Shown: positions 31,427-51,511 of the stretch, piece by piece | Numbering within the stretch: the first letter of the stretch is position 1 | Layout of the letters: each line of letters begins with the position of its first letter | DNA from: Macrostomum lignano | Lineage: Eukaryota | Length of the DNA: 64,000 nucleotides | Direction of reading: 5' to 3' | Assembly: GCA_002269645.1 (NCBI GenBank) | Contig: NIVC01000732.1 | Location: forward strand, 248,001 to 312,000 | Made by a program: the position numbers and the translations under genes | Notes under the pieces: model-generated | Database searches by the model: none | What the model saw: the letters and a program-made list of their open reading frames with translations, nothing else | What the model was told of the DNA's origin: nothing

Positions 31427-33448
31427 ATGGCAGGTGCAGGTAATTCGTTCGATTCCGACGACGGAGGCGAGTGGCACACGGTCTGGAAGGGCGGTAAGAA
31501 GAAGCGCCAGCCCGAATCCGAGACAGTCGAAAATTGGGCTCGAGGTCAAGAAGTTCGCGATCGCGACCGACAATTTGAGGACGGTCGGGATAGCAGTGTG
31601 AGTACCAAATCTTGGCGCCAAATACAAATGAGATGCGATGAGCAACATCAGATTCGTCCCGGATCCAAATTATTTCAGCGTGGCAATAGCGAGAGAGGCT
31701 CCAGCAGAGGCGGAGGTCGTGTCGGAGCTCGAGTCGGATGGGCCAACCGCGACAGCGACAATGGAAGCTCCAGAGATGACTACAGAAGCAGTGGCGGTCG
31801 TGGAGGTCGTGGCCGATGGGCGAACCGCGACGGAGATAGTGGCAACGCCAGAGACGACTCCAGGAGCGGTGGTGATCGAGGAGGTCGCGGGGGATGGGCC
31901 AACCGCGACGGCGACAATGGGAGCTCCAGAGACGACTCCAGGAGCGGTGGTGGTCGAGGAGGTCGCGGGGGATGGGCCAACCGCGACGGCGACAATGGGA
32001 GCTCCAGAGACGACTCCAGGAGCGGTGGTGGTCGAGGAGTTCGCGGGGGATGGGCCAACCGCGACGGCGACAATGGGAGCTCCAGAGATGACTACAGAAG
32101 CAGTGGCGGTCGTGGAGGTCGTGGCTCGTGGTTTAACGTCGAGGGCGAAAATCGAAACGCCAGAACCGACTTCAGAAGCAGTCGCGGCAGCGTTGAGTAC
32201 AGAGGTAGATACGATTCCAGAGGCCGCGGCAGAGGTCGAGGAGACGGAAGGACGTCAGCACCTCGGGACAGCAGGAAAAATCAGAACTGGAATTTTAGTA
32301 CTCTAATGTGCGGCCCTGCCGACTCGCAGATTGTGTTTACCGAATATCAGGGCTTTTGCAATCAGAGGGCTAAAGAACTTCGCGATAGAGGCCACATCCA
32401 TGTGGCCCTTTTTCGGACGACGACTGACGAAGAAGTGTGTCAGAATTTTCGAGAGAAGCTACGTTCGATCACTACATCCATGACTGAATGCAAAGATTTG
32501 CTCAACGAAAATTGCCAATTGAGAGCTTTTATCCGGGTCGGAGATCTGTACTTTCGTCACAGCAGCTTCCGGTTTGACAGCCGTCCTGGACCTCAGCTTA
32601 GAGACTTCGGCGATCTGATGGAGTCAGACAAGTTCGAAGAAGCGTCTCAACGATTGGACAGGTTTTTCGATCCCGACAAGGAAGTTTCCTGCCGACGACA
32701 CCTAATTACCTCAACATTCGTGACTGAGAAAACCGTGGCAAATCATGCCCTGCTGGAGGTGTTCCTCAGCATGCGAGACTTCGAGGAGGTCAGTGACAGA
32801 GAGAAAGACGTGATTCTCACCCTTACATTGAACGGAGAGCAAAGAAAGTTTGAGCTCACATACGACGCGAACAATCTGGTATTGGACTCTGTGATGCTGA
32901 TCACTAGCAAATGGAATCTGAACATTGTCACAGCAAAGGGCACCGACTACCAGGGCTCATTTAACGAAGTCGCCGACTTTAGACTGCAGTTCGAAGCTTC
33001 ATTTCCCAGCGACACGGAGGAGGTCAATGAGAGCTTGGCTGCCGAAGGATTCAAAAAAGAAGACCTGCAGCAGTTGTTCGAAAGAATCGGCGAGGCCCCG
33101 ACTGCCTCAGATTTGTTGTCGGATGGCTCCGAGAGGCACTACCGGCTGAAAAGTCTGCCACACCTGGCAGAGAAGCTGGATTATGTTCGCGAGCAGATTA
33201 ATAGAACCTTCGTGCGGGATCACGACCGATGGCCACTTCAAGTGAGGCTTCGGCAGTTCAAATTCTACAAGTTAGTAAATCCCGTGGCTGGCGTGTTCCA
33301 GCCGCTGCCCGGGGTCGAGCTGCGGGTCAGCGCTGATCTGGGCTGCTCCTTGGACCCGGAGGTCCTTGGCGATCCGGAGTTCGTGAGCTACATGTGGGAG
33401 TGCTGCCAGCTGATGCAGGACCTGGTGGCCGCTTCGCTGGAAGCTTGA
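31427..33448 (+). CDS. Intronless uncharacterised protein, paralogue 2 (673 aa) with an expanded RGG/GW-like repeat N-terminus
   Basis: ATG-initiated ORF; 78-bp (26-aa) repeats at about 31738-32150; C-terminal ~390 aa very similar to paralogue 1. Confidence 0.88.
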   Translation: MAGAGNSFDSDDGGEWHTVWKGGKKKRQPESETVENWARGQEVRDRDRQFEDGRDSSVSTKSWRQIQMRCDEQHQIRPGSKLFQRGNSERGSSRGGGRVGARVGWANRDSDNGSSRDDYRSSGGRGGRGRWANRDGDSGNARDDSRSGGDRGGRGGWANRDGDNGSSRDDSRSGGGRGGRGGWANRDGDNGSSRDDSRSGGGRGVRGGWANRDGDNGSSRDDYRSSGGRGGRGSWFNVEGENRNARTDFRSSRGSVEYRGRYDSRGRGRGRGDGRTSAPRDSRKNQNWNFSTLMCGPADSQIVFTEYQGFCNQRAKELRDRGHIHVALFRTTTDEEVCQNFREKLRSITTSMTECKDLLNENCQLRAFIRVGDLYFRHSSFRFDSRPGPQLRDFGDLMESDKFEEASQRLDRFFDPDKEVSCRRHLITSTFVTEKTVANHALLEVFLSMRDFEEVSDREKDVILTLTLNGEQRKFELTYDANNLVLDSVMLITSKWNLNIVTAKGTDYQGSFNEVADFRLQFEASFPSDTEEVNESLAAEGFKKEDLQQLFERIGEAPTASDLLSDGSERHYRLKSLPHLAEKLDYVREQINRTFVRDHDRWPLQVRLRQFKFYKLVNPVAGVFQPLPGVELRVSADLGCSLDPEVLGDPEFVSYMWECCQLMQDLVAASLEA

Positions 33449-35177: not shown

Positions 35178-35672
35178 TTAATAAAATTACTGATGCAACT
35201 AGCAAGCGCTACTGTATGCAAGCACAAATTACTCGTACCCAGAACCCATGCTAGTATTTTAGCTTACGAGCGTAAAAGCCATTTGATAGCTACGACGATA
35301 TTGGTTTAGTAAATGTCCATGTCCAGAAAAGAACCCAGCTGGAGACGAAAGAACAAAAGCCGATCTACATATACTAGCTAATAAAAAATTAATAAGAAAG
35401 CAAAGTAAAACACGTTGGGGTATTCAATTGATGTGACATTTAGTATAGGGTGATGGTTTTATATGGATCACCTCTAACTGAGATGGCTTGAATTTCTAAC
35501 TATACTTGCTGAGCTCTATTTGGTTTTGCTATCTATATTTAATGCGATCGAAGAGTCCTAGTCTGACGTCATAGTTTTGTGGCTCTTAAGAAAGCTTTTA
35601 TACGGGTCAATTTTCCACATCTGCTCAATTTCAAGACGAGCGATAACAGGACGAAGCGTCCGAGAGCTGCAA

Positions 35673-36902
35673 ATGGCCGATAAAAACTTCAATAGATTCG
35701 ATCGCAGTCGCAATCAGGAATGGAGCATCCGGGTGCTTCTGTGCGGACCTGCTGACTGTCCGATTTCATTTGGGCCCTACAAAGGCCACTGGATAGGCAG
35801 TCCTGAAAAGTTGGAGTACTTCACTCGAAGAGGCTGGATCGGTGTGCCGCTGTTCGATCGCTCGAGCGATGAAGAGGTGCTTCAGCGCATCCGTCAGAAT
35901 CTGCAGTGCATGTCTAGCGACGCCGTTAGGTGTCAAGCAATTTGGACTGAGAAAGAAAAGAAGGAGAGTCGCTTCAACATGAGTCTTGAAATCGGAGATT
36001 TGTACTTCTTTGACAACAGCTTCGACTTCAGTCGCGTTCCCGGTCCGCGCTTGAGAGACTTCAACAGGCTCCTTGACACGGGCACCTTCTCGGAGGTGCG
36101 ACGCCTTCTTGAGAGCTACTTCACACTGAGAGTCAACCAAGAGAGAATGTTTTTCTCTTCAACTTTCACGCCAAAAAATATTTGCGTCAGTCGCGACACG
36201 ATTGAGGCATTCCTTGAAACAAAAGGCTTCGAAATCAAACAGAACGAGGAGCGCAGTCTGACCACAAGCCTCGAAGGTGCCAACCAAAAATTTGAGCTAT
36301 TTTTCAATCCTGCAAATCTTCAACTGCGAGACATAAAAATGGTAACCCAGAAGTGGAACCTAGACTTCGTCACTCCGAAGGGCAAAGACTACAGTGGCTC
36401 GTTTAGCGAGGTCGCTGACTTTCGACTGCAGTTCGACACTTCCTGTACAAGCGACTCTGGCAAAATCGTTACCGACAGTCTCATCGCGGAAGGATTCGTT
36501 TTGAAAGAGCTGAAGCAATTGTTCGAGAGAGTTAATAAGGCACAGAGAGACGTAGTGGATGCCTCCGATGATGCAGAGCTGTGGGAAGGCGCAGATCGTT
36601 GCTACCGACTCAAACTGCCACGTCTGCTAGATCGACTAGAAGACCCGAGTCAGCAGCTCAGTAGGTCCTTCGTTCGACGCCATGACCGATGGCCTTTCGT
36701 TGTTAAGCTACTCAAGATTCGCGTTTTCGAATTGGACGAATCAGCGGGAATATTCGTGCAGCAGAGTGTGCAGTTCCGGGTCACAGCAGGTCTGGACTGC
36801 TCCCTGGACCCGGAGGTCCTTGGCGATTCGGAGTTCGGAAGCTACTTGTGGGAGTGCTGCCAGCTCATGCAGGACATGTTGGCCTCTACCTTGAAGTCCT
36901 GA
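35673..36902 (+). CDS. Intronless uncharacterised protein, divergent paralogue 3 (409 aa from MADKNF)
   Basis: Conserves CGPAD, GDLYF, PGP.LRDF, KWNL..VT.KG.DY.GSF.EVADFRLQF, FVR.HDRWP and CSLDPEVLGD.EF.SY.WECCQLMQD. First ATG is at 35673. Confidence 0.85.
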   Translation: MADKNFNRFDRSRNQEWSIRVLLCGPADCPISFGPYKGHWIGSPEKLEYFTRRGWIGVPLFDRSSDEEVLQRIRQNLQCMSSDAVRCQAIWTEKEKKESRFNMSLEIGDLYFFDNSFDFSRVPGPRLRDFNRLLDTGTFSEVRRLLESYFTLRVNQERMFFSSTFTPKNICVSRDTIEAFLETKGFEIKQNEERSLTTSLEGANQKFELFFNPANLQLRDIKMVTQKWNLDFVTPKGKDYSGSFSEVADFRLQFDTSCTSDSGKIVTDSLIAEGFVLKELKQLFERVNKAQRDVVDASDDAELWEGADRCYRLKLPRLLDRLEDPSQQLSRSFVRRHDRWPFVVKLLKIRVFELDESAGIFVQQSVQFRVTAGLDCSLDPEVLGDSEFGSYLWECCQLMQDMLASTLKS

Positions 36903-37125: not shown

Positions 37126-37233
37126 GGGGTGCAGCCTAGTGGTTGGTTAGGGCGTCCGACTCACGAATTGAAGGTCAGGGGTTCGATTCCCGATCCCACT
37201 GGAACAATTTGTGTCCTTGTGCAAGACAGTTAA
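37126..37233 (+). mobile_element. tRNA-derived CORE-like SINE, 3'-truncated copy
   Basis: A box (GCAGCCTAGTGG), B box (GGTTCGATTCC), then GGAACAATTTGTGTCCTTGTGCAAGACA. Confidence 0.75.
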
Positions 37234-38016: not shown

Positions 38017-38706
38017 ATGCAAAGAACCATGTTAAAGCCGTTAGTTATTCAAAATACAATCAGCAGCCACAAAGAGCTGCTTCTAAAGTCAGCCTTAATT
38101 CTGGCAATTTTCGCCAACACATCTGGCTCAATTTCACTGAGCTGTTCAACAGGCTCCTACTTCAACAGGTTGAGCGGCATGTGCGACCCCTGCCCAACAG
38201 AATGCTTGACGAGTCCCCAGTCACCAAACATGACCGATTACATGCGACGGAAGTGCCAGAAGCTGGCAGACCAGTGTTCACCAAATCTAGCGACTAGCAA
38301 GTCCGGTTCAACCTCAGCAACGCCAACATCTGACAGTCCAGTGAGTAAGAGTCCAAAAAACTCTGAAGCCGGAGTCAACAATGAAGACAGGCAAGCACCG
38401 CCAGACGATCGCTATGGCCACAATGCTGCTGGTGGGATTGTTGGAGCTGCTATTCTACTGCTTCTTTTTGTCCCAGTCGGTATGAAGCTGCGATCAGCAA
38501 TTCGAAATAGATTTCGAGACAGCAACACACCGATGCGGAACATGACTGAAAACTCAAATGCAGCTTCAGCCTTCCTGCCCCCTGGCTCGAATAATACTCA
38601 TGAACCGAACGGTTTTCAAATTAGGGAAGCAACTGCCGACGACAAAGTTACCAGCCTGCCTGACAATCTACCTGAAGACCCTCCAGCGGTACCTATTGTT
38701 AAGTAA
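38017..38706 (+). CDS. Single-CRD TNF-receptor-like type I membrane protein 1
   Basis: Hydrophobic leader (LLLKSALILAIFA); CSTGSYFNRLSGMCDPCPTEC...C...C (C-x12-C-x2-C-x3-C); S/T/P stalk; TM GIVGAAILLLLFVPVGM followed by basic residues. First ATG is at 38017. Confidence 0.8.
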   Translation: MQRTMLKPLVIQNTISSHKELLLKSALILAIFANTSGSISLSCSTGSYFNRLSGMCDPCPTECLTSPQSPNMTDYMRRKCQKLADQCSPNLATSKSGSTSATPTSDSPVSKSPKNSEAGVNNEDRQAPPDDRYGHNAAGGIVGAAILLLLFVPVGMKLRSAIRNRFRDSNTPMRNMTENSNAASAFLPPGSNNTHEPNGFQIREATADDKVTSLPDNLPEDPPAVPIVK

Positions 38707-38894
38707 GCATGCACGCATCCAGTCACTTATCACTTAGGCATGGTGAACCAATTGACTAAGGATGGAGATGTTACTACCATAACGAACGACGCATAATGTG
38801 CTTGAGAAAATACAAGTAGCTAATGTAGCTTATTCTTATGCGTACTTAAATTTCGTAGCCTATGACACAACTTGTGCCATAGACGAAACAGGCG

Positions 38895-39590
38895 TGAAGT
38901 CATCCAAGGACCACTAGAAGAAGAGGGACGGGACACTTCGTTTCTTGAAAAATTTATTAAAGGCTGATTTTCACGGAAAGATGCACTAGCGAGATAGGAA
39001 ATTTTCACTTTTTTCAATTTAAAATGGTGATAGCTTTTTATTGGAAGCAGATACAATGCTTATAACTTACAAAACATGTTGCTTCAACGGATTTTATATA
39101 GATTTTTTCATGAATATTTGATCTTCATATTATTTTAGTTACTATAGCTACTTATTTTATATAAAAAGTACAAAACTAAAATGAATAAGCAGTGAATTGG
39201 GCATATAATTATAGCCAACAGTTTTTTTAATGATCTATTGCTAAAATAGATGCATTCGATTAAACAGATATTGTAAAATTCAAGTTAGTCACTAGTTAGC
39301 TTTAGACTATAATTGCTGCATGATATAGCTATAGTAACAAAAACATTATGAAGATCAATTATTTATGAAAAATCTTTATAAATCCGTTGAAGCAACATGT
39401 TTTGTAAGTAATATCAAAAGAAGAGCTTTGTATCTGCTTCCAGTAGAAAGCTATCACCATTTTAAATTGAAAAAAGTGAAAAGTTCCTATCTCGCTAGTG
39501 CATTTTTCCGTGAAAATCAGCCTTTAATAAATTTTCTAAGAAACGAAGTGTCCCGTCCTTCTTCTAGTGGTCCTTGGATGACACCGCGGC
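38895..39590. mobile_element. Palindromic MITE with ~220-bp inverted arms
   Basis: 38900-39115 is the reverse complement of 39360-39585. The subterminal motif (AAGTTCCTATCTC...TTTTTCCGTGAAAA) resembles copies A and B. Confidence 0.85.
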
Positions 39591-40115
39591 ATTAAAAATC
39601 GGCTTCAACTTTTCGTCTTTATTGGCCCTCTGTGTAAAAGTACTCTGGTAGCGTCTGATCTACAGGTACTCCGATCCAGTTTTCACTGCATCTATAGTAT
39701 ATGTTGGATTGGCAAAGCTTGAACCTAAAGTTTTATACTAGCTTAGTACTGCAATCTGTGAACAAAATGTATTATTTAAATTGTACATGTTTTACTGTGA
39801 TTACTATTGAATTCAGCTCGTATGCAACAGCATTAATATAAATTGCATTCTAGTTCATAATATTGCAATCAATGTATTTACCCCATTCAATTGTCATTTC
39901 GGCAGTAAACGTTGCGTAGTTCTAAAACATTGGCTTGTCATTTAAAAATTTCTGAAAGTAACTGTTGTTTATAGTAAACACTAACACAATTCTAACACTA
40001 TTTAATTGAATGTATGATATATAGTCAGTTGAGTCAGTTAAGTAATGTACCAATAATATTCCGTAGTGTGTAGCAAACAGAAAAATACTGTTATTGCTGT
40101 TAGTCTTCATTTTCC

Positions 40116-40116
<1 letters not shown>

Positions 40117-40205
<89 letters not shown>

Positions 40206-40230
40206 GTGTCTGTCTGTCTGTCTGTCTGCC

Positions 40231-40291
<61 letters not shown>

Positions 40292-40300
40292 TTCTGTCTG
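40117..40300. repeat. (TCTG)n microsatellite
   Basis: Directly visible. Confidence 0.97.
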
Positions 40301-40794
40301 TTTGGCCATCAATATTTGGCAGGTAATCATTCGCTACGATGTTTGGTAGTCTCTAATAAAATATTACCAGGCTACTAGGTACTACTTCCAAAAATGCAGT
40401 CGCTACACCCAAAAAAGGAGAAACCAAAAGCCCAATAGTACGTCTGCCAGCAAAGTTCCCTTTTTCGCTGTACAGAGCTATGCTGTACATTTATCAGCTC
40501 TGTCTTCGCAGTTCTGTCCAAGCGTAAATGTACACTTACGCCTAAACTATGTAGGCGTTGACTGGCTCTGCACAAGTGAGTGGCAGAGGACTAGCTCGCA
40601 TCTGGCTTGGGCAATGTCTAAAAATAGATCTTATTTACGCTTCAAGAGACCCCCCATCCAGACAGTTTACAAGCTGTACAATCTGGCAAGCTCCAAATGT
40701 ACGTAGCAAGCTTTTAAAGAGGAATGACTACACACGGAAAATATGGGCTTGACTAATTGTTAATTTTTGAACTGTTGACGAATAAAAGTTTAAT

Positions 40795-41421
40795 ATGGCT
40801 ATCAATCTGCGCGCACAGTCAGGGATACTGTGGGCTTTTGTATGCCTGTACATAGTCTCGAAGGCTTCGGCAGTTCCAGTAGTGACGAGATGTCGCGCAG
40901 ACCAGTACTACAACAGTTTGAGCCAAATATGCGAATCGTGTCCAAAGGAATGCCTGCTCGGAACGGCTAGAACTGCTTGCACTGGCATGGCTAGCCAATG
41001 CCAACCGCTGACAACATTTACTACTCTGACCGTTGTGACGACGCATGAAGTGACGACAACAAGTCAGAACTCGTCGGGCGCTGACGTGGAGAACTCGTGG
41101 ATCAGCATCATCAATCGTGGATCGATTGGTGTCCTGGTGTTCTGCGTGTTAGTCTTTTTATTTTGTAGATTATTTGCTTTTAAAAGAATGAAGAAATATT
41201 ATTTGAGACTAAAGCTGCGCCGATCAGGGGAGGTTACTGTGCCGGCTCCGGAGACAGCTGGCCCTGAAGAGTCGGAGCCTTTGGCAAAGGCAGCATCGGC
41301 ATCATCCTGTCAAGAACGTGCAGAACAACACGAAGTAAGTGCGCAGGCTAGCGCTGGCCAACACGCTAAAACCGTTTCTGCACCAAAAATTCCAGGATTC
41401 GATGCAGATGATCGTTATTAA
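40795..41421 (+). CDS. Single-CRD TNF-receptor-like type I membrane protein 2
   Basis: Signal peptide ILWAFVCLYIVSKASA; CRADQYYNSLSQICESCPKEC-x8-C-x6-C; Thr-rich stalk; TM IGVLVFCVLVFLFCRLFAF followed by KRMKK. Confidence 0.85.
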   Translation: MAINLRAQSGILWAFVCLYIVSKASAVPVVTRCRADQYYNSLSQICESCPKECLLGTARTACTGMASQCQPLTTFTTLTVVTTHEVTTTSQNSSGADVENSWISIINRGSIGVLVFCVLVFLFCRLFAFKRMKKYYLRLKLRRSGEVTVPAPETAGPEESEPLAKAASASSCQERAEQHEVSAQASAGQHAKTVSAPKIPGFDADDRY

Positions 41422-42002
41422 AAAATAGCAATTCTCATGTTGCGAATGGCCATGTTGAAAAAAAACTTTCCAGCTGACTCTTATCCATTGCCTTGTTACT
41501 TATTATCGTTCAATATTTTGGCATATAGAAGTGAACACGTGTCATATCTCTCTATCTATAAATTTGAACACTTTTTCTTTGAATATTCGTACTTTTCTGT
41601 AATACCACAGCTATATTCTACAGAGGCAAAATGCAATGTACTGCATGCAAGCTACAAATCAAAATAAACATCTTGCACGTGGACAGACAAACAACTGTAA
41701 ATAGCAGTTACTACCCCCTCATTCCTCTTAAGCGTCAAATGCGTGCTGTACAGAAGTTAATAAATCTATTTTTCTCACTAAAGTTGTCTATGGCCAAAAC
41801 CCCATTCAGCGCTTGTGCGTTCTCTATAGAGCATACTGAATGCATTGACGATAGGGCAAATACACGTTCCTTACCGACCTCCAACTCATTTTTAAGAAAA
41901 TCGAATGCAGTGTTTGCTTCATTTGATCATGTAAATCTGTTAGTTACCAGAATACCACCACGAGCGACGGCCATTTTGCATGCTCGTAGTTCTTTCATCC
42001 GT

Positions 42003-42710
42003 GCTGATAATAGTGACACAGCTCGACATCCTGACAATAGTGACATTCTGACATCCTGACTCTACTGACAATAGTGACATTCTGACATCCTGACTCTACT
42101 GACAATAGTGACATTCTGACATCCTGACTCTACTGACAATAGTGACATTCTGACATTCTGACTCTACTGACAATAGTGACATTCTGACATTCTGACTCTA
42201 CTGATAATAGTGACATTCTGACATTCTGACTCTACTGACAATAGTGACATTCTGACATTCTGACTCTACTGACAATAGTGACATTCTGACATCCTGACTC
42301 TACTGACAATAGTGACATTCTGACATTCTGACTCTACTGACAATAGTGACATTCTGACATTCTGACTCTACTGACAATAGTGACATTCTGACATTCTGAC
42401 TCTACTGACAATAGTGACATTCTGACATCCTGACTCTACTGACAATAGTGACATTCTGACATCCTGACTCTACTGACAATAGTGACATTCTGACATTCTG
42501 ACTCTACTGACAATAGTGACATTCTGACATTCTGACTCTACTGACAATAGTGACATTCTGACATCCTGACTCTACTGACAATAGTGACATTCTGACATTC
42601 TGACTCTACTGACAATAGTGACATTCTGACATCTTGACTGTACTGACAATAGTGTATGACTTCCTGACATACTGACTGTTACTGACAATTGTGAAATTCT
42701 GACATCCTGA
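42003..42710. repeat. 34-bp minisatellite (GACAATAGTGACATTCTGACATTCTGACTCTACT)
   Basis: Period 34 (42067 to 42101); built from GAC-led 8-9-mers. Confidence 0.95.
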
Positions 42711-43090
42711 TTATATTGAAAATTTTTAGTAAGAAACAGGGTTCTGTGTGCACCCTGGCGCACTTTAGGCTACATGTACATTGTCACACAACCAACGAGA
42801 GGCATTTCTGCTCATTCCGCCGACTCCCCTGAGCAGGTACACACTCACAGGAGTGTACAGCGGGCCATAAATTTATTTTCGAGCGTATTGTTAGGCATGT
42901 ACACTTCATCTTCACATCCGGATTATACTGGCAGTCTATGACTAGCAGAACCAAAGCTGACTAGCTAACAAAAATGTTAAAGTTTCTTGGTTAATTGATT
43001 CGATACTTTAAAATATACAGCTTGTTTATTTGTAAAATTAAATATTCACATGGCTGTCTGAGCCAGGCATCAGATGACAGTCTTTTTTAA

Positions 43091-43756
43091 TCAAAGTACA
43101 CTTGGTGCAGATGCGTTGCCAACGATTCGCTCAATAGAAGCCGAAAAACTTGTTGTCTCGGCTAACACATATTTTCCATTGTCTTTGTCGCCTTGGGTCT
43201 TGGTTGGCACAGCAGCACCGGTCACCAGAGAATGACTCTCGCCTTTTTCCGCGCTTCTGGCTGTTTTTTGCTTCGTGGACTTCTTATTTTGAAGCACTAC
43301 AGCCAAGATGGTAGCAAAAGTACACAAAATTAATGAGACTGTAACCAGTATAATAATTATATGCCAGGTAGCGAAGACCGTCTTTGATGAAGAAGTTTCG
43401 CCAAAACTGTTCAACTTTTGAGGCTCACTGATTGACCTCTCGGACAATGCGGTGATTCCAACTGCACTGCTAGTGTAAACAGCTGTTGTTGTCAACCACA
43501 AGCAGTAGCCAGCTCTCCACAGCCTCTTGCACCGCAGCGACCAATAGGGGCTGTGAATTTCATTGCAGTACGGGTTGAGGCACTGCGCAGGGCACGACTC
43601 GCATGTTCCAGACAACTCGCTGTAGTAGCTACCTGGAGGACACACCGCGGCCTGACGCATGTACGATCTGATCCGCATGGTCATGCATTGTGTCAAACTC
43701 ACCGATGCCATCAGCAAAACTATGAGCCTTAGGCTAAGTTGACAGCTTGCAAACAT
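43091..43756 (-). CDS. Single-CRD TNF-receptor-like type I membrane protein 3
   Basis: Signal peptide LRLIVLLMASVSLTQC; CPPGSYYSELSGTCESCPAQC; TM WHIIIILVTVSLILCTFATILAVVL followed by NKKSTK. Confidence 0.85.
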   Translation of the reverse strand: MFASCQLSLRLIVLLMASVSLTQCMTMRIRSYMRQAAVCPPGSYYSELSGTCESCPAQCLNPYCNEIHSPYWSLRCKRLWRAGYCLWLTTTAVYTSSAVGITALSERSISEPQKLNSFGETSSSKTVFATWHIIIILVTVSLILCTFATILAVVLQNKKSTKQKTARSAEKGESHSLVTGAAVPTKTQGDKDNGKYVLAETTSFSASIERIVGNASAPSVL

Positions 43757-44323
43757 TGTGCTTATTCTATTTTTTTAAAGTTGATAAAGTTTCGAATATT
43801 AACCGGATTTTGGATTCGTGATGCAAAATTTTAGCTCCGTCGTGCAAAATAAAGGATTCTAAAACACTGTACTAGCGTATGCGCTTTCGATTGTACTTAA
43901 ACATGCACTCGTATGCTAAAAATAGCATGCCGAAGTTCCACACAATGTTCATTGCACAAAAGGAGGGCTTTCATACTCGTATTGTTGCCAAAGCCGTACT
44001 GTAGTGCTCAGTGATTTTAATTTATCAGAATATAACAGAAAAAACTTCAGATATACTTTTTAGCTAAAAAGCATCCGTGTTCGTATCTTACCTGTACTTT
44101 ATTGATGAGCCTGTACAAGCTTTTTTCGCCATTTACTGAAATGTGGTTGCTATTTTGATAAACTAAACGCATCGAAGCGAAAAACATACGCAACAGAAAG
44201 GACTGAATAAACAACTCGATTAGACAAATATATATTTGAATTAATTTTTAGTCAACCAAGTAGCGTTAGCACTTGCATTAATTTTCATTATGTCAATAAA
44301 AGTTCACCCATTGACTGAAGACA

Positions 44324-44795
44324 TCACCCATTGACTGAAGACATTACCCATTGACTGAAGACATTACCCATTGACTGAAGAAATCACCCATTGACTGAAG
44401 ACATTACCCATTGACTGAAGACATCACCCATTGACTGAAGACATTACCCATTGACTGAAGACATTACCCATTGACTGAAGACATCACCCATTGACTGAAG
44501 ACATTACCCATTGACTGAAGACATCACCCATGGACTGAAGACATCACCCATTGACTGAAGACATCACCCATTGACTGAAGACATCACCCATTGACTGAAG
44601 ACATCACCCATTGACTGAAGACATCACCCATTGACTGAAGACATCACCCATTGACTGAAGACATCACCCATTGACTGAAGACATCACCCATTGACTGAAG
44701 ACATCACCCATTGATTGAAGACATCACCCATTGACTGAAGACATCACCCATTGACTGAAGACATCACCCATTGACTGAAGACCACCCCTTGACTA
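44324..44795. repeat. 20-bp minisatellite (CCCATTGACTGAAGACATCA)
   Basis: Period 20; about 23 copies. Confidence 0.97.
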
Positions 44796-45315
44796 AAGAC
44801 AGGACCTCCAAGTAAAGATAGCCACCCATGACCTGCTTCACCGACCTTTTAACGACACTGATGTAGAACCACTCGACGTTCCGGAAGTGATAAATTAATT
44901 TTTTAACTATTTCTCTATTGTCTCAGTGCTAATGCTTTCAGTTCTTTTCTATGCTCGCTGTGTATTTTTCAGAGTAAAGATGTATGTTATTAGTCTTAAA
45001 TATCAGTTTGACTAGTTCTAAATTAATCAAATATACTTGAAGAGGTTGATAGAGTAAAAAGATTAACATAGCTATCAATAAAGAAAAGAAAATGATACTG
45101 TTTGCTAACTTTCAATATATTAATTATTTTCTGTCACTGTTTAATTGATGAACTAGGATATTAGTTTAGAATGATTATGATTTTGAGTCAAGTTTATTCG
45201 CATAAAAATCCAGTAGACCTTTGGCCAAGTCTTGAGCTGTCGCGTTTCGTTGAGCTGTCTAAAACAAAAATATAACACCAGCGTTATAAAGTAGTTCGCA
45301 TTATCTGATTAGAAA

Positions 45316-45475
45316 GGGTTGTAGCCTAGTGGTAAGAGCGTCAGACTCGCGGCTGAAAGGTCGAGGGTTCGATTCTCGGCCCACTCGGAACAATTTGTGT
45401 CCTTGAGCAAGACACACTTACATGTAACTCTGCATTGCTTCAGTTCACCCAGCTGTGAAATGGGTGCCAGCATTA
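45316..45475 (+). mobile_element. tRNA-derived CORE-like SINE
   Basis: A box TAGCCTAGTGG (45322), B box GGTTCGATTCT (45366), then GTGTCCTTGAGCAAGACAC...CTTCAGTTCACCCAGCTGTGAAATGGG, resembling the MIR/CORE consensus. Confidence 0.8.
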
Positions 45476-45665: not shown

Positions 45666-48600
45666 TCACGAACGCAGACTTACCAGACGCTCCATCGCTT
45701 TGGCCTTTTCTTCTCGCAGAGCTGCGCTGTTCAGCACCATCTGCTGGTTTTCTTCAATAATTCGATCGATAATATTCGCTGCCGGGCAGTAGAGCAGCGC
45801 CATCAGCACCTGCTGGGCATCGGGAGATTCTGACGGCTTCAGCAGCTCAGTGAACCAGCTGACATCCCCGCCAGCACCGGAGATCAGTTCAAAGTGGAGA
45901 CATTTCAACAAACAGTCGAAGTTCATAAAGAACATTCTAGAACTTCTTTCCAACTCTAAAGGAAAATTTGCTTGCAGAGATGGCGGCAGAAATTCCAGTC
46001 GAATTTGTTGATGCTGGGAAAACTTGAAGCAAAACTTCCAGGCGCAGTCGCTGGTGACCAGGTATTGCTCCACGAGGCGGTTGGCTCTAGCTTGGTTCGA
46101 TGCCAGATCGTCCGACCTCCATTGGGGATATCTGATGCCACTGTGAGATCGGAATGTGTGACTTCTGATGGCTTGGACTGCCGCGGCTCTGTCCCCTTCT
46201 CTGAGATGCGTCAGCACTCGAAGCGATGTCGCTGTGGTTCTGGCGCACGCCGGCAAGTCATTAATCAATTTCAAATGCTGCGCCAAGCTGCAGCTGTTTC
46301 CAGGCGTTGCCAGGTTGACCAGCAACTGCCTGACTAAATCGTACAATTGATGGTACTCTTGCACCGAGTTGGTGCTGTCTGGACTTTGAGCATCGAACTC
46401 TTGGCACAGTTGCAGGTCCGGCATGACTAGAAAAGGTTGATAGTAAAACACCTGACAGGCAGGTCTCAGAATTTCTGAGCAATATTGCTCCAGTTGATTT
46501 GTCAGATCCTGCCGCACCGCCTCGATGGCATCGAAGATCTGCTGCCGATCGGAGTGGCCTGGTTTAAGTCTGACGCGAATCGTCGGACAAAAAATATCAG
46601 GGATCAGTGCGGCAGTGCCATCCGAACTAGCTAGGAGATAGTTCTGCAAAGTGCGCAGTGACTGGCGAGTCAGCTTGAGCACATTCTCCAGGCGCCATTC
46701 TCCACTTGGAGTCGAATGAAGCATTTGAAATAGGAGCAACTTTGCCAGATTTTCGGGTAAACCATCCACTAAGCGAGTCAGTAGTCGAGCGATGATGTAC
46801 TTTAATAGAACAAAAACCTGACCCTGAACAGTGCTCAGACAGCGTAATAGTCTTTGCTCAAGGAATTGCGTACAAAACTGAAATAGACTGGATGGTGTAG
46901 CATCTCGACAGCGTTCGGCGTAGCACCTTGAACTACTCAACTCTTTTTTCAGCTGACTGATTACGTCATCAGTGAGTTTGGTCTCTGAATTCTGCAGCAG
47001 GCTTACCGGAGGATGACGGCAGCTTTCCAGCACAGGTGAGTGGCTGATTGCTGGAATCTTGGCTTGGACAGATCCGACAGACTTGGATGGCGACAGTTCA
47101 TCTGCAGTTCGAGGGGAAATGTTAGCGGCTTGATTCCCAGTTTAGCTCGTAAATAAGGCCTTCACTGCCCCTGCTCTTCCCAACAACTGCTATAGTGCTG
47201 CCGCTGCTATCGTTGTCGTGCTAAAGCCCCTTGGTGCTAAAGCCCCTTGGTGCTAAAGCCCCTTGGTGCTAAAGCCCCTTGGTGCTAAAGCCCCTTGGTG
47301 CTAAAGCCCCTTGGTGCTAAAGCCCCTTGGTGCTAAAGCCCCTTGGTGCTAAAGCCCCTTGGTGCTAAAGCCCCTTGGTGCTAAAGCCCCTTGGTGCTAA
47401 AGCCCCTTGGTGCTAAAGCCCCTTGGTGCTAAAGCCCCTTGGTGCTAAAGCCCCTTGGTGCTAAAGCCCCTTGGTGCTAAAGCCCCTTGGTGCTAAAGCC
47501 CCTTGGTGCTAAAGCCCCTTGGTGCTAAAGCCCCTTGGTGCTAAAGCCCCTTGGTGCTAAAGCCCCTTGGTGCTAAAGCCCCTTGGTGCTAAAGCCCCTT
47601 GGTGCTAAAGCCCCTTGGTGCTAAAGCCCCTTGGTGCTAAAGCCCCTTGGTGCTAAAGCCCCTTGGTGCTAAAGCCCCTTGGTGCTAAAGCCCCTTGGTG
47701 CTAAAGCCCCTTGGTGCTAAAGCCCCTTGGTGCTAAAGCCCCTTGGTGCTAAAGCCCCTTGGTGCTAAAGCCCTACGATGGCACTCCCAAAGGTAAGCCC
47801 CCAAAGCAAAAGTCCTGGCTACATACCCAAGCAGTCTCCTCTGTAGCTCAAGCGGCCGTCTTCGCGCAGCTCCAGCTGCTCTCCCGTTGCTCCTGGAAGC
47901 AGAGCTCTACCGCTGCCGCAACGACAGACGCCGCGAACGTGCAGCACCCGACCGGGCACCGGCAGAACCAGCTTCACTTCGACATCGTCAGCTTCAAACT
48001 CGCCGTTAGCGCAGGCAAGTTGGGCACCCCAGCAGTCGGCAAAAGTGCCCGACAGGCGCATTCGAAGGTCCTCGAAGTTGTTTTCATCGTCGCCACGGTG
48101 GCACAGCCTGGTCAAACGAGCTCGACAGATGGCCTCGGTGGCATCAACCGTGGCGGCATGCAGACAGGCAGTCAGCTGGTGAAATCCGGCTGCCAGCAGG
48201 TTGCGATGGAGGCTGACGCTGAGATCGGAGTCTGAGAGCAGCGGCCTGGGTATGAAGAGAAGTTCACACTCATGTCTAACAGTCTAACAGGTGACAAACT
48301 TATGTCTAACAGTCAAACAGGTGTTACACTCCTGTCTAACAGTCTAAGAGGTGTCACACTCCTGTCTAACAGTCTAAGAGGTGTCACACTCATGTCTAAC
48401 AGTCTAACAGGTGTCACAATCATGTCTAACAGTCTAACAGGTGTCACACTCCTGTCTAACAGTCTAGCAATGACTCCAGAACCTTATGCACCAGACGATC
48501 ACCTTTCTGGATCCGTAGCAGCTAATGCATCAATTTCGCCTGTTACTTCTCGAAGCTCGCTAGCCAGGGTCGCGTGACCTCGCCGCTGTGCCGCCTGCCA

Positions 48601-51511
48601 AGCGGCGTCGCCACGAAAATCTCGCGCCGTCGGGTCGGCGCCCCCGGCGCCACCAACCAGCAGGCGGGCGATTCGAACGTCGCCAACTCGAGCTGCCAAA
48701 TGCAGCACCGTCTCGCCGGTGTCTCCGCGTCGAAGATTGGCGTCGGCGCCGGCGTGCAGTAGCTTTCGAACGGCGCCCAGCTGGCGCCGAAGCGCCGCAG
48801 TGTGTAGCGGAGTGGCGCCGCTAGCAGCGGTGCGGCAATCGATGGGGGCGCCAATGACGGAGGCGGCCAGGCACCTGTGGTGTCGATTTGGAAAATCCTT
48901 ACTCTCGATTTCACCTACTCTACCGAGTCTACTCTACCGAGTCTAGTCTACCGAGTCTAGTCTACCGAGTCTAGTCTACCGAGTCTAGTCTACCGAGTCT
49001 AGTCTACCGAGTCTACTCTACCGAGTCTACTCTACCGAGTCTACTCTACCGAGTCTACTCTACCGAGTCTACTCTACCGAGTCTACTCTACCGAGTCTAC
49101 TCTACCGAGTCTACTCTACCGAGTCTACTCTACCGAGTCTACTCTACCGAGTCTACTCTACCGAGTCTACTCTACCGAGTCTACTCTACCGAGTCTACTC
49201 TACCGAGTCTACTCTACCGAGTCTACTCTACAGAGTCTACTCTACCGAGTCAACTCTACAGAGTCTACTCTACAGAGTCTACTCTACCGAGTCTACTCTA
49301 CCGAGTCTACTCTACCGAGTCTACTCTACCGAGTCTACTCTACCGAGTCTACTCTACCGAGTCTACTCTACTGAGTCTACTCTACTGAGTCTACTCTACC
49401 GAGTCTACTCTACCGAGTCTACTCTACCGAGTCTTCTCTACTGAGACTATTCTACGAATCTATAAAAAACTCTACCAAATCAATTCCTTCCACCTGACAA
49501 CTCTCGAGTAGCCCCTCTGAGCAGCCACAAACATCGGCGAGAATCCGCCGGGCGCCGTCAGGCCCGGGTCGGCCAGCCCAACCGACACCAGCAGCTCAAC
49601 TGAGGCCGTCTGGCCGCCCTGAGCCGCCAGGTACACCGGAGTGGCGCCCCTGCGCGTCTGTCGATCAACGTCAGCCTGCATAGCAACCAGCAGGGCAAGC
49701 ACCTCAGGGCGACCTTGCCGTGCGGCCAGGTGCATCGGCAGGGCAACTTCCGGACTCGCCTGCGCCGCCAGCAGCGCCGACACCGTCCCGACGTGCCCCG
49801 CCTCGGCCGCTAGCGACATCGGCGTCGAGCCGCAATCCGCCATTGCATCGACGTCGGCTCCGGCCACCGCCAGCCGTGTCACCATGGCAACTCGACCGGC
49901 CCTGGTGGCCAGGTGCATCGGTGAATAACCACCGGCTGCCGTCCTCGAGTCCAGACCAGCCTGGCCGCGGATCAGCTCCGCGAGACAGTCGGCACGGTTT
50001 GCGACCACCGCCAGATGAGCCGCCGACGCGCCGTCGTGACGCCGAGCGTCGGGATCGGCGCCGCAGTTGAGCAGCAGCCGAATCTGCTCTGGTTGAGAGC
50101 TGGCTACTGAGAGTAGTAGCGCCGTCTCGCCAGAGCGTCCCGACACAGCGTTCGGATCGGCGCCAGCTCTCAGCAGCTGTCCGACTGTCGAGAGGCAACC
50201 CCGGCGTGCAGCTCGACCTAGCGCCGTTGTGTCACCGTCGTCTGCGGCATCATCGAGAGCGTCGACATTCACGTCGGTAAATGCTTCTTCGTCGGCCAGT
50301 GCTAATGCAGCATCGACATTGAGCGGCGCTTGAGCTTGGTACAGCCTCGAGAGGACATTCGGGTCGAGCGGGGAGTGGCTGTAATCTTCAGTGGCGATGC
50401 TGTTCACATCCGCTTGGGCTCTGATTAGCTCGTCCATTGCCGCGTAGCTCTGGAATCGGGCCGACAGGCTGAGTGGCAGCAGTGCTGAGCTGCCGCACAG
50501 GTTGGGGTTGGCCTGTGAGGCAGTTGAATTGGTTGGTTCAATTAGTATACTACTTTAAGTAGGTTAGTTCAGTGAGATGCTACACAGAAATATAACCAAT
50601 TTATTCTACACAATATTCAATATTTTCAAGCTACACAACCTACCTTATCTACCCAACCTACCCAATCTACCCAACCTACCCAATCTACCCAATGCATTAC
50701 TGAGGCTCCATGGCCACATACAGGCCCCATTAAACCACTTCAGGAAGCAATCCTTGGCCACCTGTGCATCCAGCAGGAGTCGGATCAGATCTAGACGTCC
50801 CGACATCGAGGCAATCGCCAGAGGCGACATCAGAGCGCCGTCCTCGCGGCCGCCTTGATCCGGATCGGCGCCGGCCTGCAGCAGCAGCAGCCTCACAGTG
50901 TCAACGTGTCCACCGCGGCAGGCGGCAGCCAGTGGTGATTCGACAGCAGCATCAGCGGCAGCAGCCGTATCAACTACTTGCAGTAGTTTCCTGATAACAG
51001 AATCCCGGCCGAGTGCAGCGGCAGCGGCCATCGGTGTGGCATCAGCGTGGTTTTCCTCGCCGTAGTTGGCATCGGCCCCGATGTCCAGCAGGGCAGCCAG
51101 CAGACGGTCGGAATCGTCGGGGTGTTCAGCAGTGCAAGCGATGCGCCACCACAGCCTGGGGTCGACACCGCCTTGGATCAGCAAGCAGCCAATCGAGACG
51201 GTTGCAACCGACAGAATGTTCTCCGGATTGGCTGCACTTTTTAACAGCAGCAGCTCCACCGTTGATTGATGACCGAACCGAGCTGCCGCGCCGAGGGGCG
51301 ACTCGCCGAACCGATCCGCGGTGTCCACTTGAGCCATCCGGCTGATCAGCAGCGACGCCAGGGAATCCCGACCTCCCGCCGCCGCGTGCCACAACGCCGA
51401 CCGGCCCAGGCTGTCTGCGGCATCGACTGCAACCGACTGGCTGTCGAGCAGCCTTCGCGCGTCGGCCACGTCGCCAAGTCTGGATGCCGCGATGAGCTTG
51501 GCTTCAGCCAT
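45666..51511 (-). CDS. Ankyrin-repeat plus Mab-21/cGAS-like (cGLR-type) nucleotidyltransferase, 1331 aa
   Basis: Exons 51511-50762, 50512-49494, 48874-48503, 48245-47827 and 47101-45666 have GT/AG borders, consistent phases and total 3996 nt. About 18-20 ankyrin repeats (GESPLGAAARFGH, GETVLHLAARVGD). NTase motif LSGTFADCWG...EADDVEVKL. Mab-21-like helical lobe FLEQRLLRCLSTVQGQVFVLLKYII...AKLLLFQMLHSTP..EWRLEN...LIPDIFCP. Confidence 0.82.
47217..47771. repeat. Near-perfect 16-bp intronic minisatellite (GGTGCTAAAGCCCCTT)
   Basis: Period 16 (47221 to 47237); about 34 copies. Confidence 0.98.
48267..48467. repeat. 30-bp intronic minisatellite (TGTCTAACAGTCTAAGAGGTGTCACACTCC)
   Basis: About 6-7 copies. 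Confidence 0.93.
48912..49475. repeat. 14-bp intronic minisatellite (CTACCGAGTCTACT)
   Basis: Period 14 (49021 to 49035). Confidence 0.96.

What the first reader, a model, noticed from the sequence alone, without database searches (positions are those of the whole stretch)
38017..43756. Cluster of three divergent single-CRD TNFR-like receptors with BCMA/TACI spacing
Seen: all three have a leader, one C-x12-C-x2-C-x3-C module with later cysteines, an S/T stalk, one TM helix and a short tail without a death domain. Established: BCMA has the same spacing ([21 protein letters not shown]) and binds ligand through a Y/F-D-x-L hairpin; Drosophila Grindelwald is a single-CRD TNFR. Here the hairpin reads YFNRL, YYNSL and YYSEL, with Asp replaced. 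Receptor 2 has SCQE, fitting the (P/S/A/T)x(Q/E)E TRAF consensus. Inference: a diversifying flatworm TNFR-like family with altered ligand specificity.
Basis: partly seen in the sequence, partly recalled or inferred. Interest (0 to 1): 0.72.

Follow-up and report, generated by a model that had tools for sequence, protein, structure and literature searches.

The report
Three small TNFR-like flatworm membrane genes
Three neighbouring genes of the free-living flatworm Macrostomum lignano encode small membrane glycoproteins whose single cysteine-rich domain looks like that of minimal TNF receptors such as BCMA, but no test available here could prove that they are TNF receptors.

Summary
Three ORFs (38017-38706 +, 40795-41421 +, 43091-43756 -) each encode a leader, one C-x12-C-x2-C-x3-C domain with two more conserved cysteines, a Ser/Thr-rich stalk, one TM helix and a 65-79-aa tail with no Pfam domain. 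The window is Macrostomum lignano. The same three-gene cluster lies intact at two homeologous or allelic loci. R2 and R3 are under purifying selection.

The TNFR reading is only partly supported. BCMA does have the same spacing (12,2,3,8,3 against 12,2,3,8,6 in R2). Low-confidence AF2 models give a beta-hairpin followed by short helices. Their best PDB neighbours are BCMA, BAFF-R (BR3), Fn14, Grindelwald and TACI, but no match is significant (E >= 0.77).

No TNFR, BCMA, TACI or BAFF-R Pfam model is hit. The hairpin scores equally well against non-TNFR modules: the CBM_14 C-terminal hairpin, ELAPOR1 repeats and an unclassified multi-repeat protein. The Asp of the DxL motif is absent, the last cysteine spacing differs, and the SCQE "TRAF motif" is at chance level.

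There is no host, since the worm is free-living and has its own TNF ligands. My best reading, at about 0.42, is orphan single-CRD receptors of TNFR type. Ligand binding must be tested.

The parts
38017..38706 (+). R1 coding sequence, single exon, 229 aa. The conserved start is probably Met5 at 38029.
   Evidence: ORF. The homeologue P0002 (BOX15_Mlig008173g1) is 81% identical and comes from an RNA-seq-based annotation. This copy is not annotated in the window. dN/dS against the homeologue is 1.68 (not significant), with changes concentrated in the leader and tail.
38143..38277 (+). R1 cysteine-rich domain (C43-C87), spacing 12,2,3,16,6, hairpin YFNRL.
   Evidence: Its only sub-threshold Pfam hit is the CBM_14 C-terminal hairpin (15.4 bits against a cutoff of 22.1).
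38428..38502 (+). R1 transmembrane segment (aa 138-162).
   Evidence: Hydropathy 2.3 over 19 residues.
40795..41421 (+). R2 coding sequence, single exon, 208 aa. This is the annotated protein P0001.
   Evidence: dN/dS against the homeologues is 0.37-0.39, Fisher p = 0.006. Poly(A) signals lie 242 and 338 nt downstream.
40891..41001 (+). R2 cysteine-rich domain (C33-C69), spacing 12,2,3,8,6, hairpin YYNSL.
   Evidence: AF2 gives pLDDT 64 with a hairpin plus two short helices. The Foldseek top ranks are BCMA, BR3, Fn14, Grnd and TACI, all with E >= 0.77.
41119..41181 (+). R2 transmembrane segment (aa 109-129).
   Evidence: Hydropathy 2.76.
43091..43756 (-). R3 coding sequence, single exon, 221 aa, not annotated in any of the three loci.
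   Evidence: The ORF is intact in all three loci. dN/dS is 0.18-0.43, Fisher p = 0.003-0.03. Poly(A) signals lie 61 and 214 nt downstream.
43502..43642 (-). R3 cysteine-rich domain (C39-C85), seven cysteines, spacing 12,2,3,4,11,8, hairpin YYSEL.
   Evidence: AF2 gives pLDDT 66.8 with a hairpin plus three helices. BCMA ranks first in Foldseek at E = 1.2.
43289..43363 (-). R3 transmembrane segment (aa 132-156).
   Evidence: Hydropathy 2.88.
38898..39576 (.). Foldback (MITE-like) insertion in the R1 3' UTR, specific to this copy of the locus.
   Evidence: Inverted arms at 38919-39060 and 39424-39565 are 94% complementary. The element is absent from L002 and L003. It sits about 12 nt upstream of the native ATTAAA signal.

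Best explanation
The cluster consists of three real, tandemly arranged, single-exon paralogous genes of Macrostomum lignano. Each encodes a small type I membrane glycoprotein with five parts: a cleavable leader, one 37-47-residue domain with six conserved cysteines, a Ser/Thr-rich (probably O-glycosylated) stalk, one TM helix, and a 65-79-residue cytoplasmic tail with no recognisable domain.

The domain most probably folds as a disulfide-closed 12-residue beta-hairpin (C1-C2). This would be followed by a short helical module stapled by two further disulfides, with C3 and C4 pairing to C5 and C6. That is the build of the minimal single-CRD TNF receptors BCMA, TACI, Fn14 and Grindelwald.

The most likely mechanism is as follows. 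The stalk holds the domain above the membrane. The hairpin tip, with its invariant aromatic-x-x-Leu-Ser, inserts into a groove of a ligand, and the worm's own trimeric TNF/Eiger-like ligands are the leading candidates. Ligand-driven clustering then recruits cytoplasmic adaptors to the tail.

Shown here: coding status, paralogy, topology, cysteine spacing, purifying selection on R2 and R3, and conservation of the cluster at three loci. Inferred at low confidence: the fold. Purely inferred: the ligand and the signalling.
For: - The ORFs and the motif are real and specific.
- The three-gene cluster is conserved in order and orientation at two further M. lignano loci, with all ORFs intact.
- dN/dS is 0.18-0.43, p = 0.003-0.03, for R2 and R3.
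- R2 and the R1 homeologue carry gene models from an RNA-seq-derived annotation (PMC5730564).
- Cysteine spacing is BCMA 12,2,3,8,3 against R2 12,2,3,8,6, and the invariant Leu is in the register of BCMA Leu17.
- Two AF2 models (R2 and R3) both give a hairpin at the same residues followed by helices.
- Of 350,542 PDB chains, the top Foldseek neighbours of both models are BCMA. BR3, TACI and Grindelwald follow in both lists; Fn14 and TNFR2 appear only for R2 and DR5 only for R3.
- Grindelwald shows that a genuine TNFR can lack the DxL motif, can have poor sequence similarity to other TNFRs and can superpose poorly on BCMA, TACI and Fn14 (PMC8024323).
- M. lignano has 6-10 endogenous TNF ligands (PMC7519573; bioRxiv 10.1101/2024.07.27.603686).
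Against: - No match to a TNFR is statistically significant. The best Foldseek E is 0.77 at probability 0.30, and full-length superpositions have rmsd above 5 A. Only the hairpin of 18-24 residues fits at about 2 A.
- The models have low confidence (pLDDT 64-67) and rest on four sequences. AF2 and Foldseek's 3Di+AA score may simply echo the shared cysteine motif.
- Pfam TNFR_c6, BCMA-Tall_bind, TACI-CRD2 and BaffR-Tall_bind are not hit even at E <= 10, while BCMA and TACI cross-hit each other at 17-20 bits.
All cover only C1-C4.
- hhalign gives 90% for BCMA/TACI against 94.5% for both P0004 repeats and CBM_14 hairpins.
- The Asp of DxL is missing, and the C5-C6 spacing is 6-8, not 3.
- The TRAF motif is at chance level.
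- No relatives were found outside M. lignano.
Confidence: 0.42

Rival explanations
1. These are lineage-specific mucin-like surface glycoproteins. Their cysteine cap is a generic disulfide-closed hairpin, a structural motif that recurs in many unrelated or only distantly related families. On this reading they have nothing to do with TNF signalling. They would act in cell-surface protection, adhesion, or binding of some other protein or glycan.
For: The same C-x12-C hairpin, with an aromatic residue, [DN], any residue and an aliphatic residue in the same register, occurs in three other settings. These are CBM_14 C-terminal hairpins (P0003, P0005, P0008), the unclassified multi-repeat protein P0004, and ELAPOR1 repeats of the ephrin-receptor-like (GCC2/GCC3) kind. 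All score as well as or better than BCMA and TACI. The genes have no Pfam family and no orthologues elsewhere. The stalk is rich in Ser, Thr and Pro. The tails carry no significant signalling motif.
Against: None of the alternative families shares the whole six-cysteine pattern or the single-domain-plus-TM architecture. The predicted helical second half is not a feature of CBM_14 (from my own knowledge of those folds, not tested here). The best structural neighbours are single-CRD TNFRs.
Confidence: 0.4
2. The domain is a degenerate chitin-binding peritrophin-A (CBM_14) remnant, so the proteins are membrane-anchored carbohydrate-binding mucins.
For: CBM_14 is the only sub-threshold Pfam hit (R1, 15.4 bits, E = 0.021, profile positions 27-47 of 53). 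Five of the six distant hits in the search of 1.84 billion proteins are CBM_14 mucins.
Against: Only the last third of CBM_14 is matched. The N-terminal cysteines of CBM_14 are absent. The score is below the cutoff of 22.1 bits. The full-sequence significance of the distant hits comes from summing many repeats and from the Ser/Thr-rich linkers. R2 and R3 do not hit CBM_14 at all.
Confidence: 0.05
3. The ORFs are non-functional. They would be chance ORFs or decaying pseudogenes kept open only because the duplicated loci are young.
For: Flanking non-coding DNA is 91-96% identical between the loci, so open frames alone prove little. R3 has no gene model in any locus, and R1 has none in the window. 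R1 shows dN/dS of 1.68 and a transposon in its 3' UTR.
Against: Six cysteines and further residues are invariant across paralogues that are only 22-24% identical. R2 and R3 show a significant excess of synonymous change. Every gene keeps the same leader/CRD/stalk/TM/tail layout. R2 and the R1 homeologue have transcript-derived gene models.
Confidence: 0.04

Closest known systems
BCMA (TNFRSF17), with TACI and BAFF-R: minimal single-CRD receptors for BAFF and APRIL
   Same: Both have one small cysteine-rich domain, a TM helix and a short tail without a death domain. The cysteine spacing C-x12-C-x2-C-x3-C is identical, and in R2 so is the next spacing, x8. An aromatic pair and a Leu occupy the same hairpin register. 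The predicted fold is a hairpin followed by helices. BCMA is the top Foldseek neighbour of both models.
   Different: There is no significant sequence or profile match. The Asp of the DxL motif is replaced by Asn or Ser. The C5-C6 spacing is 6-8 instead of 3. The flatworm proteins have a cleavable leader and a long Ser/Thr-rich stalk; BCMA, TACI and BAFF-R lack a signal peptide (from my own knowledge). No BAFF or APRIL orthologue is known in flatworms (from my own knowledge).
Drosophila Grindelwald (PDB 6ZSY, 6ZT0)
   Same: Grindelwald is an invertebrate type I single-CRD TNFR built from a beta-hairpin followed by a helix-loop-helix. It lacks DxL and is a poor sequence match to other TNFRs, yet it binds Eiger tightly (PMC8024323). 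It gives the best global TM-score to the R2 model (0.53).
   Different: Grindelwald has eight cysteines. Its X2 hairpin carries two intercalated disulfides, and its C2 module reads C-x3-C-x11-C-x3-C. R1 and R2 have six cysteines and an A1-type hairpin with one disulfide. The Foldseek E is 5.6-7, which is not significant.
ELAPOR1 repeats and protist-type Cys-repeat proteins such as P0004
   Same: ELAPOR1 is the best PDB sequence hit, at E = 0.087: CPAGHYINRDSGTCHLCP. P0004 repeats have the same C-x12-C-x2-C-x3-C spacing with YYN, and give the highest per-domain score (21 bits) and the longest hhalign alignment (43 columns). I take the ELAPOR1 repeats to be of the ephrin-receptor-like kind from my own knowledge; only R1 gave a faint Ephrin_rec_like Pfam hit.
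   Different: Those proteins carry many tandem repeats. Here there is a single domain on a stalk. The Pfam Ephrin_rec_like hit is only E = 8.5. The second half of the domain is predicted to be helical rather than a further hairpin.
CBM_14 (peritrophin-A) C-terminal hairpin
   Same: Both have a C-x12-C hairpin with Gly at +3, an aromatic residue at +6 and Asn or Asp at +7, followed by a Ser/Thr-rich linker.
   Different: Only one third of the CBM_14 domain is matched and the hit is below threshold. Flatworms are not known to make chitin (from my own knowledge).
The NGFR-like four-CRD TNFR reported as the single TNFR of flatworms (PMC7519573)
   Same: It occurs in the same organism and would belong to the same putative pathway. 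M. lignano has endogenous TNF ligands.
   Different: That receptor has several canonical CRDs and a death domain. The three proteins here have one atypical CRD and no death domain, and searches based on the TNFR HMM do not find them.

Membership tests
BCMA/TACI/BAFF-R single-CRD TNFRs (Pfam PF09257, PF09305, PF09256) | Match to a family HMM | tested here: not met
   No hit at E <= 10 for the full proteins or the isolated CRDs. As positive controls, BCMA and TACI hit their own models at 81-90 bits and each other's at 17-20 bits.
BCMA/TACI/BAFF-R single-CRD TNFRs | A1 hairpin C-x12-C followed by C-x2-C-x3-C | tested here: met
   All three paralogues at all three loci have spacing 12,2,3. BCMA is 12,2,3 and TACI CRD2 is 14,2,3.
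BCMA/TACI/BAFF-R single-CRD TNFRs | Asp-x-Leu motif at the hairpin tip | tested here: not met
   The sequences are N-R-L, N-S-L and S-E-L. The Leu is kept in register (C1+9) and the Asp is replaced. Grindelwald, a genuine TNFR, also lacks this motif.
BCMA/TACI/BAFF-R single-CRD TNFRs | Second (D2) module C-x3-C-x7/8-C-x3-C | tested here: not met
   C3-x3-C4 is present. C4-C5 is 8 residues in R2, 16 in R1 and 4+11 in R3. C5-C6 is 6, 6 and 8, not 3.
BCMA/TACI/BAFF-R single-CRD TNFRs | Fold of beta-hairpin plus helix-loop-helix with three disulfides | tested here: inconclusive
   AF2 predicts a hairpin plus helices, but at pLDDT 64-67 from four sequences. BCMA tops the Foldseek lists, but with E >= 0.77 and rmsd above 5 A over the full length.
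TNFR superfamily in general | Binds a trimeric TNF-family ligand | not testable with these tools
   No multimer prediction or binding assay was available. Candidate ligands exist in M. lignano.
TNFR superfamily in general | Canonical TNFR_c6 CRD (PF00020; PROSITE PS00652) | tested here: not met
   No PF00020 hit. BCMA and TACI also fail the full pattern.
TNFR superfamily in general | TRAF-binding motif or death domain in the tail | tested here: inconclusive
   There is no Death domain. A single SCQE in R2 is conserved among the R2 copies but not among the paralogues, and is expected by chance in 36-48% of shuffles. No TRAF6-type motif is present.
Grindelwald-type TNFR | Eight cysteines: an X2 hairpin with two intercalated disulfides plus C2 module C-x3-C-x11-C-x3-C | tested here: not met
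   R1 and R2 have six cysteines and R3 has seven in the domain, and the spacings differ. Foldseek TM to 6ZSY is 0.53 at E = 7, which is not significant.
CBM_14 peritrophin-A | Full six-cysteine domain scoring above the Pfam gathering score | tested here: not met
   R1 scores 15.4 bits against a cutoff of 22.1, on profile positions 27-47 only. R2 and R3 give no hit.
Ephrin-receptor-like / GCC2_GCC3 / furin-like repeats | Family HMM match and tandem repeat organisation | tested here: not met
   PF07699 gives E = 8.5 for R1 only. ELAPOR1 gives E = 0.087 on the first half only. Each protein has a single domain.

The most novel reading that the evidence does not exclude
The three proteins are genuine, highly divergent single-CRD TNF receptors of the BCMA/Fn14/Grindelwald grade. 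They would bind the expanded set of endogenous TNF/Eiger-like ligands of Macrostomum through an Asn/Ser-x-Leu hairpin. That would mean free-living flatworms have a hidden, tandemly duplicating class of minimal TNFRs that HMM-based surveys missed, in addition to the single NGFR-like receptor described for the phylum.
Probability: 0.3. Interest if true: 0.6.

Novelty: new variant of a known kind. Interest (0 to 1): 0.4.

Why it matters
One published survey describes a single NGFR-like TNFR per flatworm species (PMC7519573). A preprint counts 16 Wengen-like and 1 Grindelwald-like proteins in M. lignano (10.1101/2024.07.27.603686). M. lignano itself has 6-10 TNF ligands.

If these orphan proteins bind those ligands, three things follow. 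First, minimal single-CRD TNFRs would be shown to arise and diversify far from vertebrates and insects. Second, there would be a new hairpin motif (N/S-x-L) for ligand recognition. Third, a transgenic, regenerating model animal would gain a tractable TNF receptor set.

If they do not bind, the case is a useful warning. The C-x12-C hairpin with aromatic-[DN]-x-aliphatic residues is a generic structural motif shared by TNFRs, CBM_14 and other Cys-rich repeat proteins, and on its own it does not diagnose a TNFR.

Tried and rejected
- **Pfam scans.** Scans of the full proteins and the isolated CRDs found nothing above threshold.
- **Word-indexed protein search.** The three-paralogue profile found only P0001 (the window's own R2) and one M. 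lignano homeologue.
- **Full HMMER search of 1.84 billion representatives.** The CRD profile found no single-domain relatives outside M. lignano. It found only multi-repeat CBM_14 mucins and one unclassified repeat protein, whose significance comes from summed repeats.
- **PDB sequence search.** The only hit was ELAPOR1, at E = 0.087.
- **Building a BCMA family profile.** This failed because that search returned a single PDB fragment, so vertebrate coverage of the collection is poor. 'No orthologues found' is therefore weak evidence.
- **Taxon-coverage check.** A search with the neighbouring SH2 ORF returned only unnamed Logan and ENA proteins.
- **hhalign comparison.** hhalign against a small BCMA/TACI alignment and against control alignments did not discriminate (85.7-94.5% for all).
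- **Exact-protein look-ups for R1 and R3.** Both found nothing, which is uninformative because the annotated R2 is also seen only in the genome record.
- **Literature search by gene id.** No paper mentions it.
- **Linked TNF, TRAF or death-domain gene.** None lies in the window.
- **Inverted duplication of the flanking ORFs.** Rejected, because the ORFs are unrelated.
- **TRAF motif.** Rejected as chance.

Full report
**Source and observation**

The window belongs to the free-living flatworm Macrostomum lignano (assembly GCA_002269645.1, contig NIVC01000732.1). The middle ORF is an annotated protein of that record, and the closest relative of the first ORF is 'hypothetical protein BOX15_Mlig008173g1'.

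- R1, 38017-38706 +, 229 aa
- R2, 40795-41421 +, 208 aa
- R3, 43091-43756 -, 221 aa

A six-frame scan of the whole window finds C-x12-C-x2-C-x3-C exactly three times, once in each ORF. An alignment of the three shows 22-24% identity overall and 35-38% in the cysteine-rich part. Six cysteines are invariant, as are Tyr, Leu-Ser, Pro and Leu around them.

Hydropathy and composition confirm the described layout:
- an N-terminal hydrophobic leader, weaker in R1
- a stalk with 36-41% Ser+Thr+Pro
- one strong TM segment
- tails of 65-79 residues

No Pfam domain is found, and in particular no Death domain.

**Are they genes?**

The same three-gene cluster, in the same order and orientation, lies at two other M. 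lignano loci (L002 on NIVC01001096.1 and L003 on NIVC01001910.1), with every ORF intact. These loci are collinear with the window at 86-97% nucleotide identity, non-coding DNA included. Open frames alone therefore prove little.

Substitution patterns do show selection. R2 has dN/dS of 0.37-0.39 (Fisher p = 0.006). R3 has 0.18-0.43 (p = 0.003-0.03). R1 has dN/dS of 1.68, which does not differ significantly from 1 (p = 0.17). Its changes are concentrated in the leader and tail, while the CRD and stalk are almost unchanged.

The deep paralogue conservation of the cysteine framework is independent evidence of protein-level constraint.

The Mlig_3_7 annotation was derived from RNA-seq (PMC5730564). 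The gene models for R2 (window) and for the R1 homeologue (L002, L003) therefore imply transcripts. R3 has no gene model anywhere, so its expression is untested.

Each ORF is followed by poly(A) signals within 61-250 nt. Comparison with the homeologues suggests that R1 really starts at Met5 (nt 38029).

**Sequence-level family tests**

No TNFR-type Pfam model (TNFR_c6, BCMA-Tall_bind, TACI-CRD2, BaffR-Tall_bind) is hit by the full proteins or by the isolated CRDs, even at E <= 10. As positive controls, human BCMA and TACI CRD2 hit their own models strongly and each other's at 17-20 bits. I verified both control sequences against PDB entries.

The only sub-threshold hits are these:
- CBM_14 on the R1 hairpin (15.4 bits, cutoff 22.1)
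- Ephrin_rec_like at E = 8.5

A CRD profile searched against all PDB sequences finds only ELAPOR1 repeats (E = 0.087, first half of the domain).

A full HMMER search of 1.84 billion representative proteins finds only P0001 and the M. lignano homeologue P0002 as single-domain hits. The other six hits are long multi-repeat proteins. Five are CBM_14 mucins, and one (P0004) is an unclassified repeat protein with 'CxNGTYYNSxxNTCxxCPxNC' units.

Per-domain scores against the CRD profile all lie in one range:

| Target | Bits |
|---|---|
| P0004 (unclassified repeat protein) | 21.0 |
| CBM_14 protein (P0005) | 17.2 |
| ELAPOR1 | 16.3 |
| P0008 | 14.6 |
| BCMA | 10.6 |
| TACI CRD2 | 5.2 |

All of these matches cover only the C1-C4 half. 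Pairwise hhalign gives 90% for a BCMA/TACI alignment, 94.5% for P0004 repeats, 94.5% for CBM_14 hairpins and 85.7% for P0008 units.

The conclusion is that the hairpin is a generic structural motif: C-x2-G-x-aromatic-aromatic-[DN]-x-aliphatic-x3-C. Sequence alone cannot assign these proteins to the TNFR superfamily.

**Pattern and structure**

The cysteine spacings are as follows:

| Protein | Spacing |
|---|---|
| BCMA | 12,2,3,8,3 |
| TACI CRD2 | 14,2,3,6,3 |
| R2 | 12,2,3,8,6 |
| R1 | 12,2,3,16,6 |
| R3 | 12,2,3,4,11,8 |

The last spacing differs in all three, and the C4-C5 loop varies among the paralogues.

The Leu that is invariant here sits at C1+9, the position of Leu17 in BCMA's D15-S16-L17. 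Asp is replaced by Asn (R1, R2) or Ser (R3).

AF2 models of the R2 and R3 domains have pLDDT of 64 and 67, from four-sequence alignments. Both place a beta-hairpin on the same residues (strands 11-14 and 19-22). Short helices follow: 25-29 and 33-36 in R2; 25-28, 33-36 and 38-49 in R3.

A hairpin followed by a helix-loop-helix is how PMC8024323 describes the ectodomain of the single-CRD TNFR Grindelwald, whose overall topology it says resembles Fn14, BCMA and TACI CRD2.

In Foldseek against 350,542 PDB chains, BCMA chains take most of the top ranks for both models. For the R2 model they hold ranks 1-4, 6-9, 11-13, 16 and 17. The remaining TNFR hits are:

| Target | Rank for R2 | Rank for R3 |
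|---|---|---|
| BR3 (BAFF-R) | 5 | 47 |
| Fn14 | 14 | not listed |
| TNFR2 | 18 | not listed |
| Grindelwald | 31 (best global TM, 0.53) | 31 |
| TACI | 33 | 20 |
| DR5 | not listed | 37 |

Furin-like modules of ErbB and insulin receptors are interleaved in both lists. ELAPOR1 and the EGF domains of coagulation factors appear only in the R3 list.

No hit is significant. The best E is 0.77 at probability 0.30. Alignments that include the second half have rmsd of 4-6 A, and only the 18-24-residue hairpin fits at about 2 A.

Both AF2 and Foldseek's amino-acid term can echo the shared cysteine motif. The ranking is therefore suggestive, not proof.

The SCQE 'TRAF motif' in R2 is conserved among the R2 copies but not among the paralogues. 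It is expected by chance in 36% of shuffles of that tail, and in 48% of shuffles for any of the three tails. There is no TRAF6-type motif.

'Diversifying' is not shown, because two of the three genes are under purifying selection.

'Host TNF-family ligands' does not apply, because M. lignano is free-living. The relevant candidates are its own TNF ligands: four genomic plus six transcript-derived in PMC7519573, and six 'Eiger' homologues in bioRxiv 10.1101/2024.07.27.603686.

The same literature reports one NGFR-like TNFR per flatworm species. The preprint reports 16 Wengen-like and 1 Grindelwald-like proteins in M. lignano. I could not determine whether that single Grindelwald-like protein is one of the proteins studied here, because no accession is given in the text held.

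**Interpretation**

The most probable single reading, at about 0.42, is as follows. These are orphan type I membrane receptors, so far specific to Macrostomum. Their one cysteine-rich domain is of the TNFR single-CRD build: an A1 hairpin plus a helical module held by two disulfides. A mucin-like stalk presents it, and endogenous TNF-like trimers are the leading candidate ligands.

Grindelwald shows that a real TNFR can lack DxL, can be undetectable by TNFR HMMs and can superpose poorly on BCMA, TACI and Fn14 (the preprint read states that PF00020 fails to detect known Grindelwald homologues). The negative family tests therefore lower the claim 'it is a BCMA-family member' much more than the claim 'it works like a minimal TNFR'.

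The main rival, at about 0.40, is that the hairpin is generic and the proteins are mucin-like surface glycoproteins unrelated to TNF signalling. A CBM_14 remnant (0.05) and non-functional ORFs (0.04) are unlikely.

**Limits**

Both structure models rest on four sequences, because homeologue sequences from the other loci were not accepted. The protein collections appear to cover eukaryotes unevenly: a search with human BCMA returned only a PDB fragment. The absence of orthologues outside M. lignano is therefore weak evidence. No multimer prediction, transcript data or flatworm genome search was available.

**Verdict**

The cluster is a new variant of a known kind if the TNFR reading holds. Interest is moderate (0.4). 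The decisive step is a binding test, in silico as a 3:3 complex and then in vitro, against the worm's own TNF ligands.

Noticed in passing
window 38898-39576: A foldback (MITE-like) element of about 680 nt, with 142-nt arms that are 94% complementary. It is inserted about 12 nt upstream of R1's native poly(A) signal and is absent from both homeologous loci. It may explain why this R1 copy has no gene model and shows relaxed constraint.
   Followed up: partly
window 41895-42772; 44184-44882; 40113-40310: Three tandem-repeat arrays in the intergenic DNA of the cluster. They are a 34-nt unit between R2 and R3, a 20-nt unit upstream of R3, and a (TCTG)n microsatellite upstream of R2. The microsatellite produces the spurious 'CLSV' ORFs.
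   Followed up: no
window 37144-37228 and 45330-45414: Two 85-nt direct repeats, 79% identical, bracket the three-gene cluster. They contain a sequence like a tRNA T-arm (GGTTCGATTC) and look like tRNA-derived SINE fragments. ARAGORN finds no tRNA there.
   Followed up: partly
window 19359-21806 and 16499-17245: An LTR-retrotransposon pol ORF with RT, RNase H and integrase domains, and a separate RNase H / zf-RVT ORF. The high-GC block at 16-22 kb matches these elements.
   Followed up: no
window 49472-50437 and 50645-51511 (- strand): Exons of an ankyrin-repeat gene lie next to the cluster. The same neighbour is present at locus L002, which confirms synteny of the duplicated region.
   Followed up: no
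window 7495-7986: An ORF with an SH2 domain. Its relatives carry a tensin-type PTB domain (PF08416) plus SH2, so it is probably an exon of a tensin-like gene.
   Followed up: partly
window 35577-36902 (+), 45666-47033 (-), 31427-33448 (+): Long ORFs of 441, 455 and 673 aa flank the cluster and have no Pfam match. The first two are unrelated to each other, and the third is an annotated gene of 646 aa.
   Followed up: partly
L002 13573-16521: The homeologous locus L002 has about 2.9 kb of extra DNA between R2 and R3 compared with the window. The motif scan found no fourth receptor ORF in it.
   Followed up: partly
P0008 (a database protein, not in the window): A 556-aa repeat protein of unknown origin carries units such as CPREQYYDSINRIC. 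The Y-[FY]-D-[ST]-[ILV] sits in the same register as BCMA's YFDSL. This shows that the 'DxL hairpin' sequence occurs outside TNFRs.
   Followed up: partly
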